Part shown: positions 532 through 22,314 of the stretch, in pieces | Layout of the letters: each line of letters opens with the position of its first letter | Position numbering within the stretch: position 1 is the first letter of the stretch | Source: Octopus sinensis | Taxonomy: Eukaryota | Assembly: GCF_006345805.1 (NCBI RefSeq) | Contig: NW_021833194.1 | Coordinates: 1-29,485, forward strand | DNA: 29,485 nt | Reading direction: 5' to 3' | Position numbers and translations under genes: made by a program | Notes under the pieces: model-generated | What the model saw: the letters and a program-made list of their open reading frames with translations, nothing else | Told to the model about the DNA's origin: nothing | The model's database searches: none

Positions 532-680
532 ATTCATCATAACTGTCTGACGAACGGGGACGTGAAACTCTGAGTAACAATTTTGTCGTAATTTTGCAGC
601 TTCAATAAAAGCATATTACTCTACCTTTGGTATTCGAGTACTATATCTCTTCCGCCTTGTTTTGCATTTATATCATTTAT
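531..680 (+). mobile_element. Probable Penelope-like element terminal-repeat remnant carrying the hammerhead
   Basis: Hammerhead followed by AATAAA at 604-609. Minimal hammerheads of this type are a known hallmark of Penelope-like elements; no RT or GIY-YIG sequence seen, so the assignment is inferred. Confidence 0.4.
538..585 (+). ncRNA. Minimal type I hammerhead ribozyme
   Basis: CTGACGA core 547-553; stem II ACG-(GGGA)-CGT 554-563; GAAA 564-567; palindromic stem III ACTC-T-GAGT 567-575; GUA cleavage triplet ending at A576; stem I CATAACTGT 538-546 / ACAATTTTG 577-585 (7 of 9 pairs). Confidence 0.8.
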
Positions 681-689
681 GAGCTTACT

Positions 690-1103
690 TTGTGTGTGTG
701 TGTGTGTGGAGAAAGAGAGATAGAGAGAAAGAGATAGAAGGAAAGACAGACAAGGAAAGAGAGAAAGAGAACGAAGGAGATGGGCAACGAAGGTGTTGGG
801 TGAAGTATTTATATGTCTGTGTGTGTGTACTGTGTACTGTGTTATCTGTGAGAGTGCAGACGGTGAAGAACAAATGAAGAATAGCTCCATTAACGTGCGT
901 GTGCATGTGTGTGTGTGTGTTGTGTGTGTGTGTGTGTGCATGTGTGTGTGTGTATGTGTGTGTGTGGCGGGGTTTAGAAGTGATAGCGAAAGGCTCATTA
1001 ACGTACAGAAGAACGAGTACTGGTCTGTGTGACTGCATTTCTCTCGCTCCACCGAATGAATTAGAAAAATTAAATTAATGCCTGGTAAAGAAATACACAC
1101 ACA

Positions 1104-1260: not shown

Positions 1261-1509
1261 CTAAGTAGAATTTTGCTGAAGAAGGAAGACGAAATGAAAA
1301 CAAAGCGTCTACAATGTTTCTTTAATTATGTCTTATAAATGTTTATTATTGTTTTAAATTTTTGTCCGCAAAAAAGAATTTAGTTTAATATAATCTATCT
1401 AATTTTGTATGATGTTATTTGCATATTACACATACACATCTGTACTCGTACATATGCACAGGAATATATTATTTTAAAAATATATATATTTTGTAATTTC
1501 AGACATTTA

Positions 1510-2081
1510 TAATAATAATAATAATCTTTTCTACTAAAGGTAAGAGGCTTGAAATTTGGCGGAAGGGGACTGGTCGATTACATCGACCCCAGTGTATAAC
1601 TGGTACTTATTTAATTGACCCCGAGAACATGAAAGGCAAAGTCGACCTCGGCGGAATTTGAACTCAGAACGTAACGGCAGACGAAATACCTATTTCTTTA
1701 CTACCCACAAGGACAGACAAACCGATTAAATCGATTACATCGACCCCCAGTGCGTAACTATTACATAATTTTTCGACCCCGAAAGGAAAAAAGGCAAAGT
1801 CGATCTCGGCGGAATTTGAACTCAGAACATAACGGCAGACGAAATACCTATTTCTTTACAACCCACAAGCGGCTAAACACAGACGGGACAAACAAGGACA
1901 GACAAACGGATTAAGTCGATTATATCGACTCCAGTGCGTAACTGGTACTTAATTGTTCGACCCCGAAAGGATGAAAGGCACAGTCGACCTCGGCGGAATT
2001 TGAACTCAGAACGTAACGGCAGACGAAATACCACTAAGCATTTCGCCCGGCTTGCTAATGATTCCGCTAGCTCGCCGCCTT
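1510..2081 (-). mobile_element. tRNA-derived SINE with Meta-like body, three internal modules, (ATT)n tail
   Basis: Minus strand: head GGCGGCGAGCTAGCGGAATC, B-box-like GAGTTCAAATTCC and GTCGACTTTGCCTTTCATCCTTTCGGGGTCGA body repeated three times (GAACTCAGAAC at 1660, 1818, 2002), then 3' end and ATT tail. Confidence 0.85.
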
Positions 2082-2095
2082 AATAATTCATAATA

Positions 2096-2307
2096 GCAGA
2101 ATCATTAGCACACCAGCAAAATGCTTAACGGCGTATCGTATGCCTTCGAATTTCACAGAGGTACGAATTCCATTTCCGCAGAAATCGACCTTGCTTTTCA
2201 TCCTTTCGGCATCGATGAAATACGTATCAGTTGAGCACTGGGGTCGATGTAATTGGCTGATCCTTGTCAGGGAAATTGCTGGCCTTGTGCCAAAATCTGA
2301 AACCATT
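2096..2307 (+). mobile_element. Older, diverged copy of the same Meta-like SINE family
   Basis: GCAGAATCATTAGCAC head remnant, CTTTTCATCCTTTCGG body, GGCCTTGTGCCAAAA 3' end; head-to-head with the 1510-2081 copy. Confidence 0.75.
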
Positions 2308-2940: not shown

Positions 2941-3320
2941 ATCAAATCATATAAACAACCTGCAGAGAAACGATCTGGTGGAGGCTGTAACTGAGGAAGA
3001 GAATGTAACTATTCTTTGGGACTTCCCAGTGTCTACAGACTGGACCATCAAAGCAAATAAACAACCTGCAGAGAAACGATCTGGTGGAGGCTGTAACTGA
3101 GGAAGAGAATGTAACTATTCTTTGGGACTTCCCAGTGTCTACAGACTGGACCATCAAAGCAAATAAACAACCTGCAGAGAAACGATCTGGTGGAGGCTGT
3201 AACTGAGGAAGAGAATGTAACTATTCTTTGGGACTTCCCAGTGTGTACAGACTGGACCATCAAAGCAAATAAACCAGATATTGTTGTGAAAGACCAAAAC
3301 AATAAAGTCTGCTTACTTAA
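2941..3320 (+). mobile_element. Fragment of an RLE-class (R4/Dong-like) non-LTR retrotransposon endonuclease domain with internal 3 x 106-bp tandem repeat
   Basis: Third unit reads EEENVTILWDFPVCTDWTIKANKPDIVVKDQNNKVCLL, matching the ILWDF..TD..I.AN.PDIVV motif of PD-(D/E)xK restriction-like endonucleases; units start at 2951, 3057, 3163. Confidence 0.85.
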
Positions 3321-4502: not shown

Positions 4503-4881
4503 TGTGGAAGCACTCCGTCGGTTACGACGATGAGGGTTCCGGTTGATCCGATCAACGGAACAGCCTGCTCGCGAAATTAACGTGCAAGTGGCTGAGCACT
4601 CCACAGACACGTCCCTTAACGTAGTTCTCGGGGATATTCAGCGTGACACAGAGAGGGACAAGGCCGGCCTTTGAAATACAGGTACAACAGAAACAGGAAG
4701 TAAGAGTGAGGAAAGTTGTGGTGAAAGAGTACAGCAGGGATCCCCACCACCCCTGCCGGAGCCTCGTGGAGCTTAGGTGTTTTCGCTCAATAAACACTCA
4801 CAACGCCCGGTCTGGGAATCGAAACCGCGATCCTACGACCGCGAGTCCGCTGCCCTAACCACTGGGCCATTGCGCCTCCAC
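4503..4881 (-). mobile_element. Full-length tRNA-derived SINE with 12-bp TSD
   Basis: Minus strand head GGAGGCGCAA-TGGCCCAGTGG (A box)...GGTTTCGATTCCC (B-box-like); ACACAGAGGAAC at 4491-4502 and 4882-4893; same family as 15414-15797. Confidence 0.9.
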
Positions 4882-6186: not shown

Positions 6187-6226
<40 letters not shown>

Positions 6227-6237
6227 ATATATATATA

Positions 6238-6351
6238 TCACCGTGACCGACCAGGCTATCAGATGTTGCTACACATCGCTGGTCCACAATGTGCTTCGCA
6301 TTTTTTTAGCCTTCAAATGACGCCACCCCGCTGGCTAAGCGAGCAGGCCAA
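6238..6351 (-). mobile_element. Repeat fragment, probably the 3' part of a SINE (copy 1 of tandem duplication)
   Basis: Near-identical to 6796-6906, embedded in (TA)n; SINE assignment is from recalled similarity to octopus repeats only. Confidence 0.4.
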
Positions 6352-6367
6352 TATATATATATATATA

Positions 6368-6752
6368 TCTTATATATAAAAGAGAAGTTGTGTGTCTGTC
6401 TCTACGATTTAGTTCCTAACTACTCCCACATTTGCGCGTGCAGTTTAACCAAAACCGGGTATCTTATAGTCGTGATTCATATCGAGCCCTTCTGTGTATT
6501 AGCGCGCGTCTACGATGAGTCTACGATTTTAAAAATAATTTACCATCATTTTTTCCATTTTAATGCATTTTTCGCTAAGGGAAGTAACTCTCTAAAAATG
6601 TCTACAATGAGTCGACGATTTTAAAAAAAATTACCATCATTTTTTTCCGTTTTTAATGCTTTTTTTTTTGCTATTTTTTGGCTATAACTCTCTAAAAATG
6701 CTTATATAGTTATTTCCCTTATAAACCGAGCAACGCCGGGCGATACTGCTAG
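6368..6752 (+). mobile_element. Non-autonomous Helitron, copy 1
   Basis: 5' TC start in (TA)n, two internal ~95-nt subrepeats, 3' GC-rich hairpin CCGAGCAACGCCGGG then CTAG at 6749-6752. Confidence 0.8.
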
Positions 6753-6784
<32 letters not shown>

Positions 6785-6795
6785 ATATATATATA

Positions 6796-6906
6796 TCACC
6801 GTGACCGACCAGGCTATCAGATGTTGCTACACATCGCTGGTCACAATGTGCTCGCATTTTTTAGCCTTCAAATGACGCCACCCCGCTGGCTAAGCGAGCA
6901 GGCCAA
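6796..6906 (-). mobile_element. Repeat fragment, probably the 3' part of a SINE (copy 2)
   Basis: Duplicate of 6238-6351. Confidence 0.4.
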
Positions 6907-6922
6907 TATATATATATATATA

Positions 6923-7315
6923 TCTTTATATATAAAAGAGAGTTGTGTGTCTGTCTCCTACGATTTAGATTCCTAACTACTCCCACATTTTGCGGTTGCA
7001 GTTTAACCAAAACCGGGTATCTTATAGTCGTGATTCATATCGAGCCCTTCTGTGTATTAGAGCGCGGTCTACGATGAGTCTACGATTTTAAAAATAAATT
7101 ACCATCATTTTTTCCATTTTAATGCATTTTTCGCTAAGGGAAGTAACTCTCTAAAAATGTCTACAATGAGTCGACGATTTTAAAAAAAAATTACCATCAT
7201 TTTTTTTTCCGTTTTTAATGCTTTTTTTTTTGGCTATTTTTTGGCTATAACTCTCTAAAAATGCTTATATAGTTATTTCCCTTATAAACCCGAGCAACGC
7301 CGGGCGATACTGCTA

Positions 7316-7316
<1 letters not shown>
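6923..7316 (+). mobile_element. Non-autonomous Helitron, copy 2
   Basis: A|TC start at 6923, hairpin CCCG-A-GC-AAC-GC-CGGG 7289-7304, CTAG|T end at 7313-7316; A/T insertion site as expected for Helitrons. Confidence 0.85.
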
Positions 7317-7349
<33 letters not shown>

Positions 7350-9200: not shown

Positions 9201-9307
9201 ACGCTTGTCTGTGGATTGGCCAGCTATTTGCACTTTAATTTCACGCGCTGGCTGTCCCGTTGATCAGATCAACTGGTACCCGCATCGTCGTAACCGACGG
9301 AGTACCA
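9201..9307 (+). mobile_element. 3' fragment of the 4503/15414 SINE family
   Basis: Ends GTTGATCAGATCAACTGG..CATCGTCGTAACCGACGGAGT, matching the 3' end of 15414-15797. Confidence 0.75.
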
Positions 9308-9659
9308 GTTTAGTTTTAGGGAGGTGTATGTGATTATAGTAGGGTATATGATTGTTGTAGTGTAGTGTGATTGTGGGGAAATTTTGTAGTAGTTTGGTTG
9401 TAGTGTAGAGTGGTCCTACCGTGGTTGTATTGTGGTGGATCATGGTTGTGCTGTAGTTGTGGTGCAGTTGTGGCGGCGCAGAGTGGTGTCATTGTAATGT
9501 GATGGTATCGTACAAATCTAGAATGGTCGTGGTATAGTATGGTATATTTCTGTTTGTGATGTAGAGTGGTGTCGTTGTGATGGCGTCGAGTGTTCGTCGT
9601 GGCCAACTCTTCATGTTTTTAGAAGCTGCACTTCAGTCGCCTTAAATAGTTTTGATGGA

Positions 9660-10062
9660 GGCGCTAAGTCGGTTACATCGACCCCAGTGCGTAACTGGTA
9701 TTTATTTTATCGATTCCAAAAGGACGAAAGGGAAAGTTATCTTCAGCGGAATTTGAACTCAGACCGTAAAACCAGACAGAAATATTAGTTTCAAATTTTG
9801 GCACTAGGTCAGTAATGCCTAGGGATGGGGGTAAGTCTATGACATAATCCCCCAGTATTCAACTGGTACTTATTTCATCGACCCCCTCCCCCCGAAAGGA
9901 CGAAAGGCAAAGTAGATCTCAGCGGATTCTGTCATCTCGCCGCCTTGAAAGAATGAAAGGCAAAGTCATCTTCACAGAATTTGGACTCAGAACGTGCAGA
10001 CGGACGAAATGCCGCGAAACATTTTGTCCGAGGTGCTAACGATTCTGCCAGCTCGCTGCCTT
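9660..10062 (-). mobile_element. Cluster of truncated or internally deleted Meta-like SINE copies
   Basis: Repeated GAAAGGCAAAGT / GGAATTTGAACTCAG bodies and heads (CTCGCCGCCTT at ~9935, GCTCGCTGCCTT at ~10051). Confidence 0.8.
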
Positions 10063-10072
10063 ATACAATAAT

Positions 10073-10473
10073 TATTTCTACCTTAGGTACAAGGCCTTGA
10101 AAATTTGGTGGAAAGGGGGCTAGTCAATTGCATCGACCCCAGTGCGCAACTAGTACTTAATTTATCGACCCTGAAAGGATGAAAGGCAAAGTCGACCTCG
10201 GAGGAATTTGAACTCAGAACATAGCGGTAGACGAAATACCTATTTCTTTACTACTCACAAGGGGCTAACCACAGAGAGGACAAACAAGGACAGACAAACG
10301 GATTAAGTCGATTAGATCAACCCTAGTACACAACTAGCACTTAATTTGTCGACCCCGAAAGGATGAAAGACTAAGTCGACCTCGGCGGAATTTGAACTCA
10401 GAACGTAGCGCTAGACGAAATACTGCTGAGCATTTCGCCCGGCGTGCTAACGATTCGGCCAGCTCTCCGCCTT
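10073..10473 (-). mobile_element. Two-module Meta-like SINE with 18-bp TSD
   Basis: GCTGCCTTATACAATAAT at 10055-10072 and 10474-10491; modules 184 nt apart (10210, 10394). Confidence 0.85.
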
Positions 10474-10779
10474 GCTGCCTTATACAATAATATTAATGGT
10501 TCCAAATTTTGGCACGAAGCCTGCAATCTCGCCACCTTGAGTATGAAGATTAACATGCAATGTGGTTTGTAGTTTGATCCAGTGTGATTGTAGTGGTGTG
10601 ATGTAATGCAGTGCACTGTGGGAGCCCAATATGATGTAGTGTGGTTGTATAATCGTAGTGTTATGGTGGTGGTAATGTAGTGCAGTGTGGTGGAGTGAGT
10701 TTGTAGGTGTGGTTGTAGTATAGTGAGAATGGCTATAATGGGATAGTGTTGTGTTGTTGATGCTGGTGCGTTTTATATT

Positions 10780-13132: not shown

Positions 13133-13237
<105 letters not shown>

Positions 13238-13240
13238 TAT

Positions 13241-13432
13241 ACCGGTGATTGTCGTGCACTGATGACGGGTCAATACCCAGAAACTGCAGTCCGTGCGTAT
13301 CACTTAGGTTGACGAGGGAAGGATGACCTCCCTTTGCAAATACCGATAGGGCACAGAAAGTGTGCCTATAGCCAGCTGGAGGAGATGTTCTCCTGGGGCT
13401 ACAAGCTACAGTAACATCCACCCTTAGTGGTT
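13241..13432 (+). mobile_element. ~190-nt hammerhead-bearing structured element, copy 1 (retrozyme-like or Penelope terminal repeat)
   Basis: About 85% identical by hand alignment to 20758-20948 (-); flanked by (TA)n on both sides. Confidence 0.8.
13245..13303 (+). ncRNA. Type I hammerhead ribozyme
   Basis: CTGATGA 13259-13265; stem II GGGT-CAAT-ACCC 13267-13278; GAAA 13280-13283; palindromic ACTGCAGT 13283-13290; GUC cleavage after C13291; stem I CGTGC/GTGCG plus distal GTGAT/ATCAC. Confidence 0.75.
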
Positions 13433-13827
13433 TTATATATATATATATTTATAGATATTATTGACTGCTATGAACATTCAAACTTACACCTTCTGTTTTG
13501 AACATATTAATTTATCAACATTGAAATATTTTAATTTGTCAACATTGAAACTTTAAAAGATGTTTTTCTAATTTTAAACTTTTACCATTGATAAACAAAA
13601 AAAAATATTGTTGAATCTAGTTTGGTATATATGTAAATAAATGTATTTTAAACGTTTACGAGTTTTTAAAATTTAGGTGCATTTTCAATAACACATTTTC
13701 CTATATATATATACTATGTATATTTTAAAATATGATATAAAATACCTAATTTTATGTAAATTATTGCAAATTATAGACAATTGCGGACTAAGTCAGAAAA
13801 GTATGAAAGATCCTATACCAGTACGCA

Positions 13828-13846
13828 TGTCTGTCTGTCTGTCTGT

Positions 13847-13887
<41 letters not shown>

Positions 13888-13955
13888 TGCCTGCCTGCCT
13901 GCCTGTCTGTCTGCCTGCCTGCCTGCCTGTCTGTCTGTCTGTCTGTCTGTCTGTT
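13828..13955. repeat. (CTGT)n/(CTGC)n microsatellite
   Basis: Direct reading. Confidence 0.95.
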
Positions 13956-15413
13956 AATATATATCTAATTATGCAAGTATATATATACATGTGTACAATG
14001 CTTATAATGTATTACACAAATATGTGTATATTTGTGTGTATATGCGTGTATGTATATATGTATGTATGTGCACACACACACACACATACACACACACTCT
14101 CTCTCAAACATACAGTCATTGTGTTTCAAAAACCTGATTAATAACATCAATAGGGAAAAATAACTTGTCATCGAATTAAGAAATCTTCGATAATTCGACC
14201 TCTACTATAATAAATGACCCCAAAGCTTTGAATTCAAAGATGGGATTATTTATACATCTAACACCCAACCAATCAATGTTATTAACGCTGTAATATTGTT
14301 TAGTTTACATCGCTTTTAGCCTTAATTTTCAAGTCTGATATTTTCAGGAACACCCACGCCGAAAAGAAAAAAAAAAGAAGAAAAAAGACCCCCCCCAAAA
14401 AAAAACAGAAACAAAAACAAAACAAAAATATTTAATAGAAGCAATATGAAAGTAAGTTACAGCTGAACAATGAATATGAAGAATAAAATAATGCGAAGCG
14501 ACTAAATTATTAAAGTTCCCTGTATCTACGTAAAAACAGCCTTGCACTCATATTTAGTCATGTAATGCTGAAGCAATCGTATTTGAAGCTGGAATCACTT
14601 CCACAAAACCTATATATCGAGCGTAATCTTAATCCAGGGATAGTGTTGAATTTAAGCATTTGGACTAAGCTTAAATCGAAATTTGGGTTTTTCGTTCAGA
14701 AATATATATGTGAGAAAAAATTTTTTTCATTCAACTACGTCCGGTATTTTGAAGACTAGGATAATGAGGTCAGTGTCAAAGATCCTTGAAAGAGTCAGGT
14801 CAAACGTGAATCAAAGGAAAGAGTTTCATCTTCAAAAAAAGAAGAGTTTTATTCCCAAAACTCTTCAATCAATCTAAGAAGTAAATATGCAATACACATT
14901 CACGCACACACAGACACTCCCACATCCACCCACACCCACCCATCCAATACCCACCCACCTAACACATACCCAATTAACACACACACACACATACGCACCC
15001 ACCCACCCAACACACACACACACACATACACACCTGCACGCACACACATACATGTACATGCACGCACATAATTATGCGAAATGGACTTCTCAATCATACG
15101 GCCATGCCTGTGTGTACATGTACGTATGTATGTCAGTATTGTGTGTGTGTGTGTGTGCGTACGCATGCGTGGTTGTCTGCAAGAGTATGTAACATGTGTA
15201 TAGGTGTATTAACTTTAAGTGCACTATTAGCCTTTTTTTTTATAAATAAACATCTATTATATAAAGTAAGAAAATAGTATACGTACTTAGATTTAAATTA
15301 CTCCCTCTAAGCCAATTAATAAATTAACCAACGTTGACTACGGATGCTGTTTTATGTAAATTATACTAACTAGTTTAACTGAGTCTTAGTTTGCTTATCT
15401 TATAAATAGCTAC

Positions 15414-15797
15414 GGAGGCGCAATGGCCCAGTGGTTAGGGCACCGGACTCGCGGTCATAGGATTGCGGTTTCGATTCCCAGACCGGGCGTTGTGAGTGTT
15501 TATTGAGCGAAAACACCTAAAAGCTCCACGAGGCTCCGGCAGGGGATGGTGGTGATCCCTGCTGTACTCTTTCACCACAACTTTCTCTCACTCTTACTTC
15601 TTGTTTCTGTTGTACCTATATTTCAAGGGACCGGCCTTGTCACCCTCTGCGTCACGCTGAATATCCCCCGAGAACTACGTTAAGGGTACACGTGTCTGTG
15701 GAGTGTTCAGCCACTTACACGTTAATTTCACGAGCAGGCTGTTCCGTTGATTCGGATCAACCGGAACCCTCATCGTCGTAACCGACGGAGTGCTTCC
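15414..15797 (+). mobile_element. Full-length tRNA-derived SINE with 10-bp TSD
   Basis: A box TGGCCCAGTGG 15424-15434, B-box-like GGTTTCGATTCC 15467-15478; AAATAGCTAC at 15404-15413 and 15798-15807. Confidence 0.9.
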
Positions 15798-16329
15798 AAA
15801 TAGCTACAGGTTTCTAAGTCTGTGGCCAGAATATGGTAGCCTTTCTTTGATGAAGGATCTAAGAAAACTAACAACGTTAGCTTAGTTCGTCTTTCTTTTA
15901 CCCACAGTGAGATAAAAGTACCCAAGGTGTGACTATTTTGGTTACATTTCACAGCGAAGCTAAAAGTATGTTTAGTACAAAGGTATAGTTTTGTATTTGT
16001 GCGTGTGTGATGTGTATTTATATATGCATACACGTGTGTGGGTGTGTGAGATGTGCGTGTATTTGTATCTGTACGTATGTAATATATATGTGTGTGTGTG
16101 TATCACATATAAATATATATATATTTATATGTATGTATATATAAGTGTGTATATAACTGTGTCTATTTTTATATATGCATGTATATAATATAATTGCTGC
16201 AGTATGACCACAGCCTTAGGGCTCAAGTGTGTAATAGAATAAAAGTAAAAAGAATATATATATATATGGAAAGATAGATAGACCGATTATATACATATGC
16301 ATACTTAAACAAACATACGCGCACACACA

Positions 16330-16332
16330 TAC

Positions 16333-16416
<84 letters not shown>

Positions 16417-16577
16417 TTTATTTATTTATTTATTTTTTTTGTTCTTTTCTTCCCTTTTACGATCTCTCTTGATCGAAAACCTACGTCACCCCTTTTTTTT
16501 TTCCATCCCCCAAAAGAAAAGCTCTACCTTGTAACTTGTCCCATCTGTGTGCAGCCCTGTGTGGCCAATAAAGAAAC

Positions 16578-16656
<79 letters not shown>

Positions 16657-16870
16657 CACAAACATATACACTTATACACACACACATACACACACGTATA
16701 CACTCACACATACACACACACATTCTCACACGTACACACACACACACACATTCTCACACGTACACACACATACACACACACAGGCACACACACACACACA
16801 CACACACGCACACACACATACACACACACATACATACACACTCACAGGTACACACGCACACACACACATT
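16330..16870. repeat. (CTAT)n and (CA)n arrays around a short repeat 3'-end fragment at ~16500-16580
   Basis: Direct reading. Confidence 0.85.
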
Positions 16871-17169
16871 CCAACGTCGGGGTTGACTACATGTAAAGAA
16901 TAAAGCATCGGAAACGTGCGTCTAAGTATATGTGACATGGAGTCACAGGGGGAGGAAAGGAGTGACAGTAATGACAGGTGACACCTTATATCTATCTACT
17001 CTGCTGCTCCTCCTTCAATATACCATTATCAATGACAACACCCACGCCTCTCCGCCCTCTTCTGTTGAGAGTCTTTTTTTTTTGTGTGTTTTGGAAAATT
17101 TTAAAATTCCTATTTAAACATTTTGTTTGTCTTTTAAAATATGTTCCTCGCTTTTCAGTTCTTATTTAC

Positions 17170-17205
17170 ACCACCACCACCACCACCACCACCACCACCA
17201 CCACC

Positions 17206-17253
<48 letters not shown>

Positions 17254-17597
17254 GTTAGAAATGCATGTATCGTCATCACAGCCCATCATCATCATCATCA
17301 TAGTCGTCGTCATCATCGTCATCGTCATTGCCATCATTGTTGTAGTCATCGTCATCATCATCATCATCGTCGTCGATGTCGTCCTCTTCCTCCTTCTTCT
17401 CCTCCTCCTCTTCTTCCTCCTCCTCCTCCTCCTCTTCATCTTCATCATCATCCGTGCCATTACAATTACAATCATAATCATGATCGTCACTATGATCGTC
17501 ATCACATTGTCATCAGTATATAACATCGTTGTATATAGTGGATGTCATTATCGTGTCACCATCATCATCATCATCATCATCGTCATCATCATCATCG

Positions 17598-17629
<32 letters not shown>

Positions 17630-17959
17630 ATCATCATCGTCATTATCATCGTCATCGTCATCATCATCATCATCATCATCGTCATCATCATCATCGTCGT
17701 CGTCATCGTCATCGTCATCGTATCATCATCGTCATCATCATCGTCATTATCATCGTCATCGTCATCATCATCATCATCATCATCATCGTCGTCGTCGTCA
17801 TCATCATCGTCATCATCGTCGTCGTCATCATCATCATCATCGTCATCATCATCGTCGTCATCATCATCATCATCATCATCATCGTCATCGTCATCATCAT
17901 CATCATCATCATCATCATCGTCGTCGTCATCATCATCATCATCATCGTCATCATCATCG

Positions 17960-18003
<44 letters not shown>

Positions 18004-18071
18004 GTCGTCGTCATCATCGTCGTCGTCATCATCATCATCATCATCATTCTCATCATCATCCTCCTCATCAA

Positions 18072-18108
<37 letters not shown>

Positions 18109-18190
18109 GTCGTCATCATCATCATCATCTCCTGTCATCACTGCCACCACTATTATCGTCTGTCATTACTTTAGATCTCACGTCCCCAGC
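17170..18190. repeat. (CAC)n, (TAC)n, (CCT)n and ~900-bp (CAT/CGT)n arrays
   Basis: Direct reading; source of the poly-Ser/His/Asp/Ile ORFs. Confidence 0.95.
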
Positions 18191-18803
18191 GTCAACAATC
18201 ATCGACTATCATAGTCATCTCCCAACATCGCCATCATCGTGTGTCGTTATTTCATCTACTTGAAACGCAAATCATTATCGCATATATTTGCATGAGTGAG
18301 CGAACGAGCGAGAGAGGGAGAAAGAGAGAAAGAGAGAGAGAGAGAGAAAAGAAAGAGAGAGAGAGAGAGAGAGGATGCAATCAGAATGTAAATCTTGAAA
18401 TGTTTATTTCTTGTCCAAGTACATCAATAATAATGTAAGCACTTGATGATAATATAAACATTAGAGATACGGAGAGGGTTGCCTCGTCCTCAGGAACATC
18501 TATTTCACTCAAGTACGAAGCACCAATATTTATATAACGGAATTGGTGGAAGGGTTCTTTTTTTTTTTTTGTTATAAGAAGATGAGGACTAGTTTTAAAA
18601 GCATCCCGAAAGCAGGGAAATTCGTGAAAAGAAAGTCATGTCTGTATTATATGTAACAACAAAATACTCAACGTGTCTTGACGTTTTTAGATAACGTATA
18701 TCCTTGCATTGTTTTTCGTAAAACCTTAGTATAGGTCTTAGTATATGTCTTTGTTTGCACTAGTAAAGAGTCCTGGTCGTCATAACAAAGAATTATTATT
18801 ATA

Positions 18804-18945
18804 AAGGCGGCGAGCTGGTTTTGTGTTCAAATTCCAGCGAGGTCGACTTTACCTTTCATCCTTTCGGGGTCGATAAATTAAATACTAGTAATCGACTAGT
18901 CCACTCCCCACAAATTTGAGGCCTTGTGCCTTCAGCAGAAAGGGC

Positions 18946-18989
<44 letters not shown>
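18804..18989 (+). mobile_element. Internally deleted Meta-like SINE with (ATT)n tail
   Basis: AAGGCGGCGAGCTGG head joined to GTTCAAATTCC and GTCGACTTTACCTTTCATCCTTTCGGGGTCGATAAA. Confidence 0.8.
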
Positions 18990-18990
<1 letters not shown>

Positions 18991-19459
18991 ATATTTTCCA
19001 GATATCCCCGGTCGGACAGTATGCTACCAGGGGTTGAGCATTGTAGGTTTGCGATTGAACATTGTAGGTAGCGATTTTCTTCACTACTTCAGGGAGTGAC
19101 GACCCTGCCTGACACGAGTCCAGGGCTCAGTTGGCTCCGGCTGACAGTACCCTGTATGGGCCCCTATCCAGGTTTACGGAAAGGAGACAGCCATCAAAGA
19201 AATCCGGAGTGGAGCCCCGTAGGCAGTTTAGTGTTCGACTTGACACTCTTCCGGCAGCTCCTGCAACCAAGCTGGTGCCAAATGTAATGCTCTGCACTCC
19301 TTTGGACTACGTCAGCAAGGTCGAGAGAGAAATCCTGACGACTTTTCTTACGTCAAGCCCGGGCCTGCGCAGAACTGGAGAGGACATGAAATGTAAAAAC
19401 CAGACTGGATTAGTTTATGCGCAACTCCATTGTCTCCCAAGAAAAAAGGATGCCAACAA
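18990..19459 (+). mobile_element. Probable RTE-derived non-autonomous retroposon (5' UTR-like body, short 3' end)
   Basis: First 71 nt recur at 20084-20154. GGCAGCTCCTGCAACCAAGCTGGTGCCAAA..CCTTTGGACTACGTCAGCAAGG resembles RTE 5' UTRs as I recall them; family not verified. Confidence 0.5.
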
Positions 19460-19494
19460 TTATTACTTTCGTCTTCATCATCATTATTATTACT

Positions 19495-19762
19495 GAAGGC
19501 AGCGAGCTAGCAGAATCGTTAGCACGCCGGACGAAATGTTTAGCGGTATTTCGTTCGTTTTCACGTTCTGGTTCAATTTCCACCAAGATCGACATTGTTT
19601 TTCATCTTTTTGGGGTTAATGAAATAAATATTAATCAAATAATGAGATCGATGTAATCGACTAGCCCCTGTCTCAAAAACGATCGGCTTTGTGCCAAAAG
19701 TTGAAATAACTTTCATCATCATCATCATCATCATCATTATTACTATCATTATCATTATTACT
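19495..19762 (+). mobile_element. Meta-like SINE, diverged
   Basis: GGCAGCGAGCTAGCAGAATCGTTAGCACGCCGG head, body, (CAT/ATT)n tail. Confidence 0.8.
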
Positions 19763-19770
19763 ATTTTTAT

Positions 19771-20083
19771 AAAAGCGACAAGCAGGCAGAATCGTTAGCA
19801 CCGCTGACAAAAAGCTTAGCGGCATTTAGTCCGTCTTTACGTTCTGAGTTCAAATTCCGCCGAGTTCGACTTTGCCTTTCATCTTTTTGGGGTCGATAAA
19901 ATAAATACCAGTTATACACTGGGATCAATCTAATCGGCTATCCCCCTTCCCCCGAATTTCACGCCTTGTGCTTATAGCAGAAAGGATTATTATTATTATC
20001 ATCATCATCATCATCATCATTATTATTATTTGATGTATATTATTATTATTATATTATTATTATTATTATTATTATTATTACTA
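19771..20083 (+). mobile_element. Meta-like SINE
   Basis: GCAGAATCGTTAGC head, GAGTTCAAATTCC, TTCGACTTTGCCTTTCATC body, (ATT)n tail. Confidence 0.85.
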
Positions 20084-20154
20084 CATATTTTCCAGATATC
20101 CCCGGTCAGACAGTGTGCTGCCAGGGGTTGAGCATTGTAGGCTTGCGATTGAAC

Positions 20155-20620
20155 TCCACAGACACGGAAGCACGATCTGCTGTGCCTGTCCGAGATGTGC
20201 GCAGGACAACGAAACTTTTCTGCATGCACGTCTTCAGTGACCGAGCCATGGTGACTCTTGGAGTTATTTGAAATAACTGCCACCGTATGTAAGACAGATA
20301 GGGCTATCAGCCAAGTCTATTATGAAGATTGTTCCGCTGTCTTCTTTGGCCTGGAAAGGAAAGCAGCTTTCGTCTGTCTAGTGGCCTTGGCGAATGATAT
20401 TGCAATGGACAAAACTGAAAAGGCTTAAGACAACCTTTTTTTTGGCCAAACCATCACCAAGGTTTCTTAAAAGTTTTATTTGAGAAAGGAAAATGAGTGT
20501 GGAGAAGGAAGTGCCTCCCAGTAAATTTAATAAAAGGTGAAAGTGGAGCGCATATCCTGCTCTGAGCATGCGCTTGAAGATTGGAGCTGGACAGCTGGTT
20601 GAGGGCGCTGTGCTTTAGTG
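20155..20620 (+). mobile_element. Decayed Tx1/L1-type LINE ORF2 C-terminus (zinc knuckle)
   Basis: From 20187: CPRCAQDNETFLHARLQ*P, i.e. Cx2C..ET..H..(C>stop), typical of the zf-RVT motif; downstream stops and frameshifts. Confidence 0.7.
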
Positions 20621-20757
20621 GCTGAGGTGACCGAAGTTCTTTGTGATATTTCCACGTGCATATCTCCGAAGTTTCTCTTTGATCTTTTGGGTAAATCTTT
20701 CTCTGTTTTGAATATTGCTTTTTCATCGTGACATATATTTGCCATTTAAATATGGCT

Positions 20758-20948
20758 AACCCCTAAGGGTGGACGCTACTGTAGTTTGTAGCCCCAGGAG
20801 GACACCTCCTCCAGCTGGCTTTAGACACACTTTCTGTGCCCTACCAGTATTTGCAAAGGGAAGCCATCCTTCCCGTCTTCAACTTATGATACACGCGGAC
20901 TCGAGTTTCTGGGTATTGACCCGTCATCAGTGTGTGACAATCACAGTT
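20758..20948 (-). mobile_element. ~190-nt hammerhead-bearing structured element, copy 2
   Basis: Reverse complement aligns end to end with 13241-13432. Confidence 0.8.
20886..20944 (-). ncRNA. Type I hammerhead ribozyme
   Basis: Minus strand CTGATGA (20930-20924), GGGT-CAAT-ACCC, GAAA (20909-20906), palindromic ACTCGAGT, GUC cleavage after 20898; stem I partly eroded. Confidence 0.7.
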
Positions 20949-21172
20949 GTCGATGAAAAGTAGGTTCCCTTAGCAAATACTTATCCCTTTTCCAGTATTG
21001 TAAAGACACTGATATCGAAAAAGTGTAATCAAGCAATAATAAATCTTAGTGTTTTTGTTGTTCCATATTTGTCAGCAGTATTTTTATATAATCCTAAACT
21101 TATCATTTTTACACCACCTTCGACTTTTAATAATCTTTTCAAGTTAATAAAATATTTATTGCTATTGTTATG

Positions 21173-22243: not shown

Positions 22244-22251
22244 CTCTAATC

Positions 22252-22314
22252 GGACACAGACTGTGTGTCGTTAGCCAGCTGGAGGAGATGTCTTCCTGAG
22301 GCTCTAAACAACAG
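22252..22314 (+). mobile_element. 3' fragment of the hammerhead-bearing element (no ribozyme)
   Basis: GACACAGACTGTGTGTC..TAGCCAGCTGGAGGAGATGTCTTCCTGAGGCT aligns with ~13350-13411; in (TA)n context. Confidence 0.7.

What the first reader, a model, noticed from the sequence alone, without database searches (positions are those of the whole stretch)
13241..20948. Dispersed ~190-nt hammerhead-ribozyme element (retrozyme-like) with a palindrome-preserving change between copies
Seen: copies at 13241-13432 (+) and 20758-20948 (-) are about 85% identical by hand, yet the 33 nt from CTGATGA to the GUC cleavage site differ at only two positions. That change (ACTGCAGT vs ACTCGAGT) keeps stem III a perfect palindrome. 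Established: minimal type I hammerheads with palindromic stem III cleave as dimers and occur in Penelope-like elements and in non-LTR retrozymes that make small circular RNAs. Inference: this is a non-coding, ribozyme-processed mobile RNA family. The copies include sequence 5' of the cleavage site, which suggests an uncleaved, multimeric or circular template. Caveat: both copies have A.C oppositions next to the core in stems I and II, which may slow cleavage. The class is known; I cannot tell whether this family is described.
Basis: partly seen in the sequence, partly recalled or inferred. Interest (0 to 1): 0.85.

Follow-up and report, generated by a model that had tools for sequence, protein, structure and literature searches.

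The report
Dispersed hammerhead-ribozyme retroelement copies (retrozyme-like)
A 192-base non-coding repeat carrying a classic animal-type self-cleaving hammerhead ribozyme occurs three times in this microsatellite-rich invertebrate-like DNA; it looks like an ordinary new family of an already described class of small ribozyme-bearing retroelements.

Summary
Two about 190-nt copies (13241-13432 +, 20758-20948 -) are 87% identical. The 33 nt from CUGAUGA to the GUC cleavage site differ only by GC to CG in the centre of ACUGCAGU/ACUCGAGU, so the palindrome is kept.

I also found a third, 5'-truncated copy (22247-22314 +) and a 37-nt inverted fragment abutting the 5' end of copy B.

The motif is a full "canonical metazoan type I" hammerhead, not a minimal one:
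- Helix I has 6 bp, a UGU/U internal loop and a 5-bp outer stem.
- Helix II has 4 bp with a 6-nt loop.
- Helix III has 2 bp with a palindromic tetraloop.

A structure descriptor expects about 0.003 such motifs per random window.

No Rfam model detects it. Rfam also misses a clean relative in a metagenome contig, so that negative result is weak.

Copies A and C lie inside (TA)n tracts, a known Penelope-like element target. There is no tandem array and no RT/endonuclease gene in the window. The source genome could not be searched.

Best reading: solo, unit-length offspring of a non-autonomous, probably Penelope-dependent, hammerhead retroelement whose ribozyme works as a dimer. It is a new member of a known kind, of modest interest.

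The parts
13241..13432 (+). Copy A, full 192-nt unit (51.6% G+C against about 38% for the window)
13245..13303 (+). Hammerhead of copy A: outer helix I GUGAU/AUCAC, internal loop UGU/U, inner helix I CGUGC(A)/(C)GUGCG, core CUGAUGA, helix II C.A + GGGU/ACCC with loop CAAU, GAAA, helix III A-U and C-G with loop UGCA, C17
13283..13290 (+). Palindromic octamer ACUGCAGU (A15.1 to U16.1). It is a 2-bp helix III with a tetraloop in the monomer, or an 8-bp intermolecular helix in a dimer
13291..13292 (+). Predicted self-cleavage site, between C17 (13291) and C1.1 (13292)
   Evidence: standard hammerhead numbering applied to the sequence; not tested experimentally
13349..13367 (+). 3'-domain hairpin GGGCACA-GAAAG-UGUGCCU. 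One pair changes G-C to G-U to A-U across copies A, B and C, and the closing pair changes G-U to C-G in copy C
13370..13400 (+). 3'-domain stem AGCC...GGCU enclosing hairpin GGAGGA-GAUG-UUCUCC. Changes among the three copies are U/C opposite G only
20758..20948 (-). Copy B, full unit in opposite orientation, 87% identical to copy A
20886..20944 (-). Hammerhead of copy B. Core, helix II and loop 2 are identical to copy A. Helix I carries one compensatory change (G-C to A-U), one U-G to C-G change and an extra A.C mismatch. Predicted cut after C20898
20899..20906 (-). Palindromic octamer ACUCGAGU of copy B
20945..20981 (+). Inverted fragment matching element positions 66-105 (29 of 39 identical), joined head-to-head to the 5' end of copy B
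   Evidence: score 18 against shuffle mean 8.5, sd 1.1, max 14.5
22247..22314 (+). Copy C: 5'-truncated, matching element positions about 100-167. It lacks the ribozyme and its 3' end runs into (TA)n
13135..13240 (.). (TA)n tract immediately 5' of copy A. A shorter (TA)n follows the copy at 13433-13452, so the copy interrupts a TA microsatellite

Best explanation
These are solo, unit-length (192 nt) and truncated genomic copies of a small non-coding retroelement that carries a canonical metazoan type I hammerhead ribozyme near its 5' end and a hairpin-rich 3' domain. It belongs to the non-LTR retrozyme / Penelope-derived class.

Inferred mechanism:
1. Active master copies, which are not in this window, are transcribed.
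2. The hammerhead has a helix III too short to be stable alone. It is therefore largely silent in a single unit and cleaves after GUC when two units pair through the palindromic loop 3 into an extended helix III, in tandem transcripts or in trans.
3. The RNA is copied into DNA by a borrowed reverse transcriptase/endonuclease, most likely from a Penelope-like element, which nicks microsatellites such as (TA)n.

This mechanism would account for four observations: copies sitting inside (TA)n, the 5'-truncated copy, the inverted fragment at a 5' junction, and both orientations.

The copies contain the cleavage site internally and share the same ends, so the template was an uncleaved linear RNA with defined ends or a religated circle, not a cleaved monomer. 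The copies in this window are probably inert offspring.

Shown: the motif, its copies, their context and the pairing energetics. Inferred: cleavage, dimer use, the RNA intermediate and the Penelope partner.
For: - **Core and helices.** The hammerhead core and three helices are present in the type I arrangement.
- **Beyond chance.** The descriptor expects 0.003 hits per random window.
- **Conservation.** There are no substitutions in the 29 nt spanning the core, helix II and loop 2, against 14% divergence overall. All 7 hammerhead differences fall in helix I or loop 3.
- **Helix I.** It shows one compensatory change and one wobble change.
- **Loop 3.** It stays palindromic. Homodimer helices score -11.1 and -10.7 kcal/mol against -2.3 for the A-B heteroduplex. 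Helix III adds only -0.6 kcal/mol in the monomer.
- **Dispersal.** Three dispersed copies lie on both strands, and one is 5'-truncated.
- **Insertion sites.** Copies A and C sit inside (TA)n, although (TA)>=5 covers only 3.5% of the window. My estimate is p about 0.006 for 2 of 3.
- **Inverted fragment.** It abuts the 5' end of copy B.
- **3' domain.** Copy C carries compensatory changes in a hairpin.
- **Literature.**
  - Canonical metazoan hammerheads have exactly this helix I/II/III layout and act as dimers (PMC4209133).
  - Non-LTR retrozymes have 150-450-bp units (PMC7229834).
  - Retrozyme monomers are dispersed along chromosomes, and retrozymes are related to Penelope terminal repeats (bioRxiv 10.64898/2026.07.22.740005).
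  - Penelope-like elements prefer microsatellite targets, including (TA)n, and make inverted or tandem insertions (PMC8557442).
Against: - No Rfam hammerhead model matches, even at E<=10 on a 72-nt slice. The same models also miss the clean relative in L001.
- The normally conserved G10.1-C11.1 pair is replaced by a C.A opposition, position 2.1/1.1 is A.C, and copy B has a second A.C in helix I. Activity may therefore be low or absent.
- The window holds no tandem array, no RT/GIY-YIG remnant among ORFs of 96 aa or more, and no clear target-site duplication.
- Only two ribozyme-bearing copies exist here, so the covariation controls are uninformative. Substitutions are not significantly depleted in paired columns (p = 0.10). 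Folding z-scores are modest, at -1.0 and -2.0.
- G+C of 51% is above the <45-50% quoted for animal retrozymes.
- No other family member was found in the searchable public collections.
Confidence: 0.6

Rival explanations
1. The copies are not a separate non-autonomous family. They are extreme 5'-truncated or solo terminal-repeat (pLTR) remnants of an autonomous Penelope-like element whose coding part lies elsewhere in the genome.
For: Most Penelope insertions are 5'-truncated and keep only one terminal repeat with its hammerhead. The microsatellite target preference and inverted adjacent fragments are Penelope hallmarks and are seen here.
Against: Copies A and B start within about 4 nt of each other and end at the same base, which random 5' truncation would not give. 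The window holds no RT or endonuclease remnant among the ORFs scanned. Metazoan Penelope elements usually carry the loop-less min-HHR with a long helix II, not this canonical form.
Confidence: 0.2
2. It is a SINE-like element of the Schistosoma Sm-alpha type. A polymerase III or internal promoter would transcribe it as a linear RNA with fixed ends, and a LINE would mobilise it. The hammerhead would be a passenger or regulator.
For: The copies are unit length with fixed ends. One copy is 5'-truncated, as in target-primed reverse transcription. Copy A ends in GGTTTT, which could be a pol III terminator remnant. The template switch implied by the inverted fragment at the 5' end of copy B fits a linear template with a real 5' end.
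Against: ARAGORN finds no tRNA-like head and I saw no recognisable A/B boxes by eye. There is no poly(A) or LINE-type 3' tail. Copy B lacks the T run.
Confidence: 0.1
3. It is an ordinary DNA repeat, such as a satellite fragment or a segmental duplication, that only resembles a hammerhead. It would have no ribozyme activity and no RNA-mediated mobility.
For: There is no Rfam hit. Mismatches flank the core in helices I and II. The evidence for fold stability and covariation is weak.
Against: The full motif is expected 0.003 times per random window. The 29-nt catalytic block is invariant while the flanks diverge. Differences in helix I and loop 3 mostly keep pairing or palindromy. The flanks of the copies are unrelated, so this is not a segmental duplication. 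An unrelated metagenome contig carries the same unusual CGGG...CCCA helix II and the CUCGAG variant with a perfect helix I.
Confidence: 0.07

Closest known systems
Metazoan non-LTR retrozymes (Cervera and de la Pena 2020, PMC7229834; Li, Clavereau and Pollet 2026 preprint, 10.64898/2026.07.22.740005)
   Same: Both are small (150-450 bp) non-coding units that each carry a type I hammerhead with a short helix III and a palindromic loop. The family is species-specific. The preprint reports dispersed monomer copies in the genomes it examined, mainly vertebrates.
   Different: This window shows only single units and fragments, with no head-to-tail arrays. G+C is 51%, not below 45-50%. Circular RNA and expression are untested. 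The base of helix II is a C.A opposition.
Hammerheads in Penelope-like element terminal repeats (Cervera and de la Pena 2014, PMC4209133; Craig et al. 2021, PMC8557442)
   Same: Shared features are the type I topology, palindromic 15.2-16.2/loop 3, inferred action as dimers, insertion into microsatellites including (TA)n, and inverted or truncated partial copies at junctions. An extra nucleotide after A9 is common in PLE hammerheads; here a C follows A9.
   Different: The typical metazoan PLE motif is the min-HHR, with no loop 3, a 7-8-bp helix II and a short helix I. This one has the canonical 6-bp helix I with an internal loop and a 4-bp helix II. No RT/GIY-YIG ORF is nearby.
Schistosoma Sm-alpha repeat hammerhead (Ferbeyre et al. 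1998, as cited in PMC6155905; architecture recalled from my own knowledge of the Martick and Scott 2006 structure)
   Same: Helix I is 5-6 bp inner stem, a 3-nt bulge on the 5' strand and an outer stem. Helix II is 4 bp with a 6-nt A-rich loop (UCAAUA here, CAAAUA there). Both sit in a short SINE-like or satellite-like repeat.
   Different: Sm-alpha has a G10.1-C11.1 pair and is a fast monomeric ribozyme. It is about 335 bp and often tandem. There is no sequence similarity outside the core.
Newt satellite 2 and axolotl retrozyme hammerheads
   Same: Helix III is very short and capped by a palindromic tetraloop. Activity is weak as a monomer and efficient as a dimer.
   Different: These are vertebrate 330-350-bp tandem units with one base pair in helix III. 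The element here has two base pairs and is from an invertebrate-like genome (CpG observed/expected 0.83-0.89).

Membership tests
Hammerhead ribozyme, type I (canonical metazoan form) | Conserved core: C3 U4 G5 A6 N7 G8 A9, G12 A13 A14, A15.1-U16.1, H17 | tested here: met
   CUGAUGA ... GAAA ... U C is present in both copies at the right spacing
Hammerhead ribozyme, type I (canonical metazoan form) | Three helices around the core with helix I open: helix I about 6 bp, helix II about 4 bp, helix III 1-2 bp with a 2-4-nt palindromic loop (definition in PMC4209133) | tested here: met
   Copy A has helix I of 5 bp plus A.C, then a UGU/U loop and a 5-bp outer stem; helix II of GGGU/ACCC plus C.A; and helix III of A-U and C-G with loop UGCA. 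Copy B meets this except for an extra A.C in helix I.
Hammerhead ribozyme, type I (canonical metazoan form) | Highly conserved G10.1-C11.1 pair at the base of helix II | tested here: not met
   C opposite A in copies A and B, and also in the metagenome relative L001
Hammerhead ribozyme, type I (canonical metazoan form) | Match to a curated covariance model (Rfam hammerhead families) | tested here: not met
   No hit at the gathering threshold or at E<=10. The L001 hammerhead, which has a perfect helix I, is also missed, so the test has low power for this short-helix-III class.
Hammerhead ribozyme, type I (canonical metazoan form) | Mg2+-dependent self-cleavage 3' of H17 | not testable with these tools
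   Needs in vitro transcription of monomer and dimer constructs
Metazoan non-LTR retrozyme | Head-to-tail tandem repeats (dimers to multimers) of a 150-450-bp unit, each unit with a hammerhead | tested here: not met
   Unit size of 192 nt fits, but self-blast and nhmmer find only two solo units and one fragment, with no tandem copies in 29.5 kb. A genome-wide test was not possible.
Metazoan non-LTR retrozyme | Non-coding, with no LTR, PBS or PPT | tested here: met
   The sense strand has stops in all frames. The open antisense frame has no homologue. There are no terminal repeats.
Metazoan non-LTR retrozyme | Low G+C (<45-50%) | tested here: inconclusive
   51.6% and 50.8% G+C, slightly above the quoted range
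Metazoan non-LTR retrozyme | Expressed as linear and circular monomeric RNA | not testable with these tools
   No transcriptome is available and the source organism was not identified
Penelope-like element (terminal repeat or truncated copy) | Associated ORF with RT and GIY-YIG endonuclease | tested here: not met
   The window has no long non-repetitive ORF. Ten ORFs of 96-127 aa gave no RT or endonuclease Pfam hit. Shorter decayed remnants were not scanned exhaustively.
Penelope-like element (terminal repeat or truncated copy) | Insertion bias for microsatellites, with inverted or tandem partial copies at junctions | tested here: met
   Copies A and C lie inside (TA)n. An inverted 37-nt fragment abuts copy B.
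tRNA-derived SINE / Sm-alpha-like SINE | tRNA-like head or pol III A and B boxes | tested here: not met
   ARAGORN finds nothing in the window. No box A/B match was seen by eye.

The most novel reading that the evidence does not exclude
The family may be a distinct 'solo' kind of hammerhead retroelement. In this reading it spreads as exact unit-length copies from an uncleaved, linear RNA with fixed ends, targeted to microsatellites. The palindromic loop 3 (CUGCAG versus CUCGAG) would act as a subfamily-specific dimerisation code: only like units pair and cleave, so mixed or single units stay intact and remain competent for reverse transcription. A second, unrelated hammerhead unit with the same layout at 534-692 would make this a general architecture in this genome.
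Probability: 0.12. Interest if true: 0.55.

Novelty: new member of a known kind. Interest (0 to 1): 0.3.

Why it matters
If confirmed genome-wide, this adds a compact (192-nt) hammerhead retroelement family from an invertebrate-like, microsatellite-rich genome. Its clean unit-length insertions have ends that do not coincide with the ribozyme cut site. Together with the (TA)n targets and the inverted 5'-junction fragment, these copies could help settle an open question: are animal retrozymes copied from circles, from multimers or from uncleaved linear RNA, and do Penelope-like enzymes do the copying? It also shows that curated Rfam models miss this short-helix-III class, so genome annotations will overlook such elements. 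In itself the finding is an expected member of a described class.

Tried and rejected
- **Rfam.** The whole window at gathering threshold, and three slices at E<=10, gave no hammerhead hit. The control on L001 was also negative, so I did not treat this as evidence against a ribozyme.
- **Public DNA scans with the hammerhead pattern.** Viral contigs gave 0 hits and bacterial/archaeal genomes gave 0. Metagenomes gave one hit, L001, which shares only the ribozyme and not the element.
- **Public DNA scans with the 3'-domain pattern.** The only hit was a chance match inside a bacterial gene, L002. Viral contigs gave 0.
- **Recovering copies or the host through spurious ORFs.** Two protein searches found nothing, and three exact-product look-ups found nothing. 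The organism remains unidentified. 'Shrimp-like' or 'cephalopod-like' is only my guess from the repeat content.
- **Literal sequence search in papers.** No hits. No supplements are held for PMC4209133.
- **Pfam on window and L001 ORFs.** No RT or endonuclease hit.
- **CpG decay as the cause of the A.C oppositions.** This is attractive because an ancestral CGCGCG/CGCGCG helix I would explain all the helix I differences by single transitions. However, CpG is barely depleted in the window (observed/expected 0.83-0.89), and both copies plus L001 share A11.1. I left it as a possibility only.
- **Target-site duplications.** None are recognisable.
- **Covariation statistics.** Two sequences are too few.
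- **tRNA-derived SINE.** Rejected.

Full report
**Observation**

The two copies are real.
- Copy A (13241-13432, +) and copy B (20758-20948, -) align at 87.3% identity over 189 nt. nhmmer E-values are about 1e-69.
- The 33 nt from CUGAUGA (13259) to C13291 differ only at 13286-13287, GC to CG. This turns ACUGCAGU into ACUCGAGU, and both are perfect palindromes.
- Sensitive searches of the window add a third copy at 22247-22314 (+). It matches element positions about 100-167, so it is 5'-truncated and lacks the ribozyme.
- A 37-nt inverted fragment at 20945-20981 (+) matches element positions 66-105 at 29 of 39 bases. It is joined head-to-head to the 5' end of copy B. Its alignment score is 18, against a shuffle mean of 8.5, sd 1.1 and maximum 14.5.
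- The flanks of the copies are unrelated, so these are insertions and not a segmental duplication.

**Anatomy of the ribozyme**

In standard numbering, copy A reads as follows:
- outer helix I GUGAU/AUCAC
- asymmetric internal loop UGU/U
- inner helix I CGUGC/GUGCG, plus an A2.1.C1.1 opposition
- core CUGAUGA
- helix II GGGU/ACCC with loop CAAU (equivalently 4 positions plus the 6-nt loop UCAAUA), over a C10.1.A11.1 opposition
- G12 A13 A14
- helix III of A15.1-U16.1 and C-G, capped by the palindromic tetraloop UGCA
- C17, with the cut predicted after 13291

Cervera and de la Pena define the canonical metazoan type I hammerhead as helix I of 6 bp, helix II of 4 bp with interacting loops, and helix III of 1-2 bp capped by a 2-4-nt palindromic loop. 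They contrast it with the loop-less min-HHR of Penelope-like elements (PMC4209133). From my own knowledge, the layout of inner stem, 3-nt bulge, outer stem and A-rich 6-nt loop 2 mirrors the Schistosoma hammerhead.

**More than chance?**

- A helix-aware descriptor finds copy A and expects 0.003 hits per first-order Markov random window on both strands.
- Copy B fails that descriptor only because of a second A.C mismatch in helix I.
- No Rfam family matches, at the gathering threshold or at E<=10 on slices down to 72 nt.
- A metagenome contig (L001) carries the same unusual CUGAUGA-CGGG...CCCA-GAAA-CUCGAG arrangement with a perfect ACUCU/AGAGU helix I, and Rfam misses it too. The Rfam negative therefore says little about this short-helix-III class.
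- L001 also shows that the C.A opposition under helix II recurs in an unrelated sequence. That argues against simple decay in these two copies.

**Conservation pattern**

- Copies A and B differ at 28 aligned positions plus one gap.
- None of these falls in the 29 columns covering A2.1, the core, helix II, loop 2 and GAAAC. At 14% divergence that has a probability of about 0.013, judged post hoc.
- All 7 hammerhead differences lie in helix I (5) or loop 3 (2).
- In helix I one pair changes G-C to A-U, one changes U-G to C-G, and one goes from G-U to A.C.
- In the 3' domain, the hairpin at 13349-13367 keeps pairing through G-C, G-U and A-U in copies A, B and C. Its closing pair changes G-U to C-G in copy C. 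A second hairpin (13378-13393) varies only U/C opposite G.
- With two or three sequences the formal controls are uninformative. 386 of 500 shuffles reach the observed values, and substitutions in paired versus unpaired columns give p = 0.10.
- Folding z-scores are modest: -1.0 and -2.0 for the linear form, -1.2 and -3.5 for the circular form.
- The pattern is therefore suggestive of selection on an RNA, not proof.

**Dimer reading**

- Helix III contributes only -0.6 kcal/mol to the monomeric fold.
- The self-complementary octamers give -11.1 kcal/mol (A with A) and -10.7 (B with B), but only -2.3 for A with B. The co-fold minimum for two A units contains the 8-bp intermolecular helix III.
- Dimeric cleavage through an extended helix III is established for hammerheads of this design in newts, axolotl and viroid-like RNAs.
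- The GC to CG swap is a single event here, so it is an anecdote in favour of selection for self-complementarity. It would also make the two variants mutually incompatible; that is my inference.

**Mobility and partner**

- The element is non-coding. The sense strand has stops in all frames, and the open antisense frame has no homologue. It has no tRNA-like head.
- Copies A and C sit inside (TA)n tracts, although (TA)>=5 covers only 3.5% of the window. My estimate is p about 0.006 for two of three.
- Penelope-like elements have a documented insertion bias for microsatellites, including (TA)n. They produce 5'-truncated copies and inverted partial copies at junctions (PMC8557442).
- A 2026 preprint argues that animal non-LTR retrozymes derive from Penelope terminal repeats. 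It reports that their monomer copies are evenly dispersed while multimers cluster.
- The features here fit that picture.
- Against membership of the retrozyme family as defined, the window has no tandem array and G+C is 51%.
- Against a direct Penelope remnant, there is no RT/GIY-YIG signal among the ORFs scanned, and copies A and B share both ends to within a few bases.

**What the ends say**

- The cut site lies 51 nt inside the unit.
- The identical 5' ends of A and B, and the template-switch-like inverted fragment exactly at the 5' end of B, fit a linear RNA with a real 5' end at unit position 1.
- They fit equally well with one round of copying on a circle from a fixed start.
- I cannot separate these two with three copies.

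**Context and limits**

- The window is eukaryotic. Perfect microsatellites make up 13% of it, G+C is 38%, and CpG is barely depleted (observed/expected 0.83-0.89). This points to an invertebrate.
- I could not identify the organism or reach its genome.
- Copy number, tandem loci, core enrichment and the autonomous partner therefore remain untested.

**Verdict**

The element is best filed as a new member of a known kind: hammerhead-bearing non-autonomous retroelements of the retrozyme/Penelope sphere. Interest is modest. What keeps it from being trivial is the clean unit-length solos, the (TA)n targeting, the recurrent C.A variant that Rfam misses, and a second hammerhead unit at 534-692 with the same layout.

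Noticed in passing
window 534-692 (+), motif 539-590: A second, unrelated hammerhead-like motif: CUGACGA (547-553), helix II ACG-GGGA-CGU, GAAA, near-palindromic CUCUGAG, then UA with the cut predicted after A576, and an interrupted helix I. It passes a relaxed descriptor that expects 0.005 hits per random window. It sits at the 5' end of a roughly 160-nt unique stretch between (CTGT)n and (TG)n, the same layout as the 192-nt element.
   Followed up: partly
L001 583-625 (+) (metagenome contig ERZ1740055 NODE-19508): A hammerhead with the same unusual helix II base (CGGG...CCCA, i.e. C.A opposition) and the CUCGAG palindrome, but with a perfect helix I (ACUCU/AGAGU), a GUA cut site and unrelated flanks. 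Rfam also misses it. No RT domain was found in the contig's ORFs.
   Followed up: partly
window 1509-2260, 9639-10491, 18818-20002: A repeat family with units of about 120-180 nt, present as short arrays on both strands at 70-90% identity. It contains GGCGGAATTTGAACTCAGAACG, which resembles the reverse complement of a tRNA B box by eye, though ARAGORN calls no tRNA. It is probably a SINE-like family.
   Followed up: no
window 2941-3274: Tandem repeat with a 106-bp period, about three units at 97.5-98.7% identity.
   Followed up: no
window 6192-7349: Tandem duplication with a period of about 558 bp (605 nt aligned at 96.5% identity). It has internal sub-repeats of about 100 nt.
   Followed up: no
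window 4505-4879 and 15414-15798: A 385-nt inverted pair at 94% identity, 10.5 kb apart, with a related 98-nt piece at 9206-9303. This is another dispersed repeat family.
   Followed up: no
window 10.8-12.3 kb, 17.2-18.2 kb, 23.7-24.1 kb, 27.6-28.1 kb: Long, imperfect trinucleotide arrays of (GTG/GTA/GAT)n type. Some are in inverted orientation to each other, for example 17.7-18.1 kb against 27.6-28.1 kb at about 80% complementarity. Perfect microsatellites make up 13% of the window.
   Followed up: no
window 13258-13261 with 13287-13290 (copy A): In copy A the minimum-energy fold pairs ACUG of the core with CAGU of loop 3, at -14.4 kcal/mol against -9.3 for the catalytic fold. This is a possible inactive alternative conformer. 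The loop-3 change in copy B weakens it.
   Followed up: no
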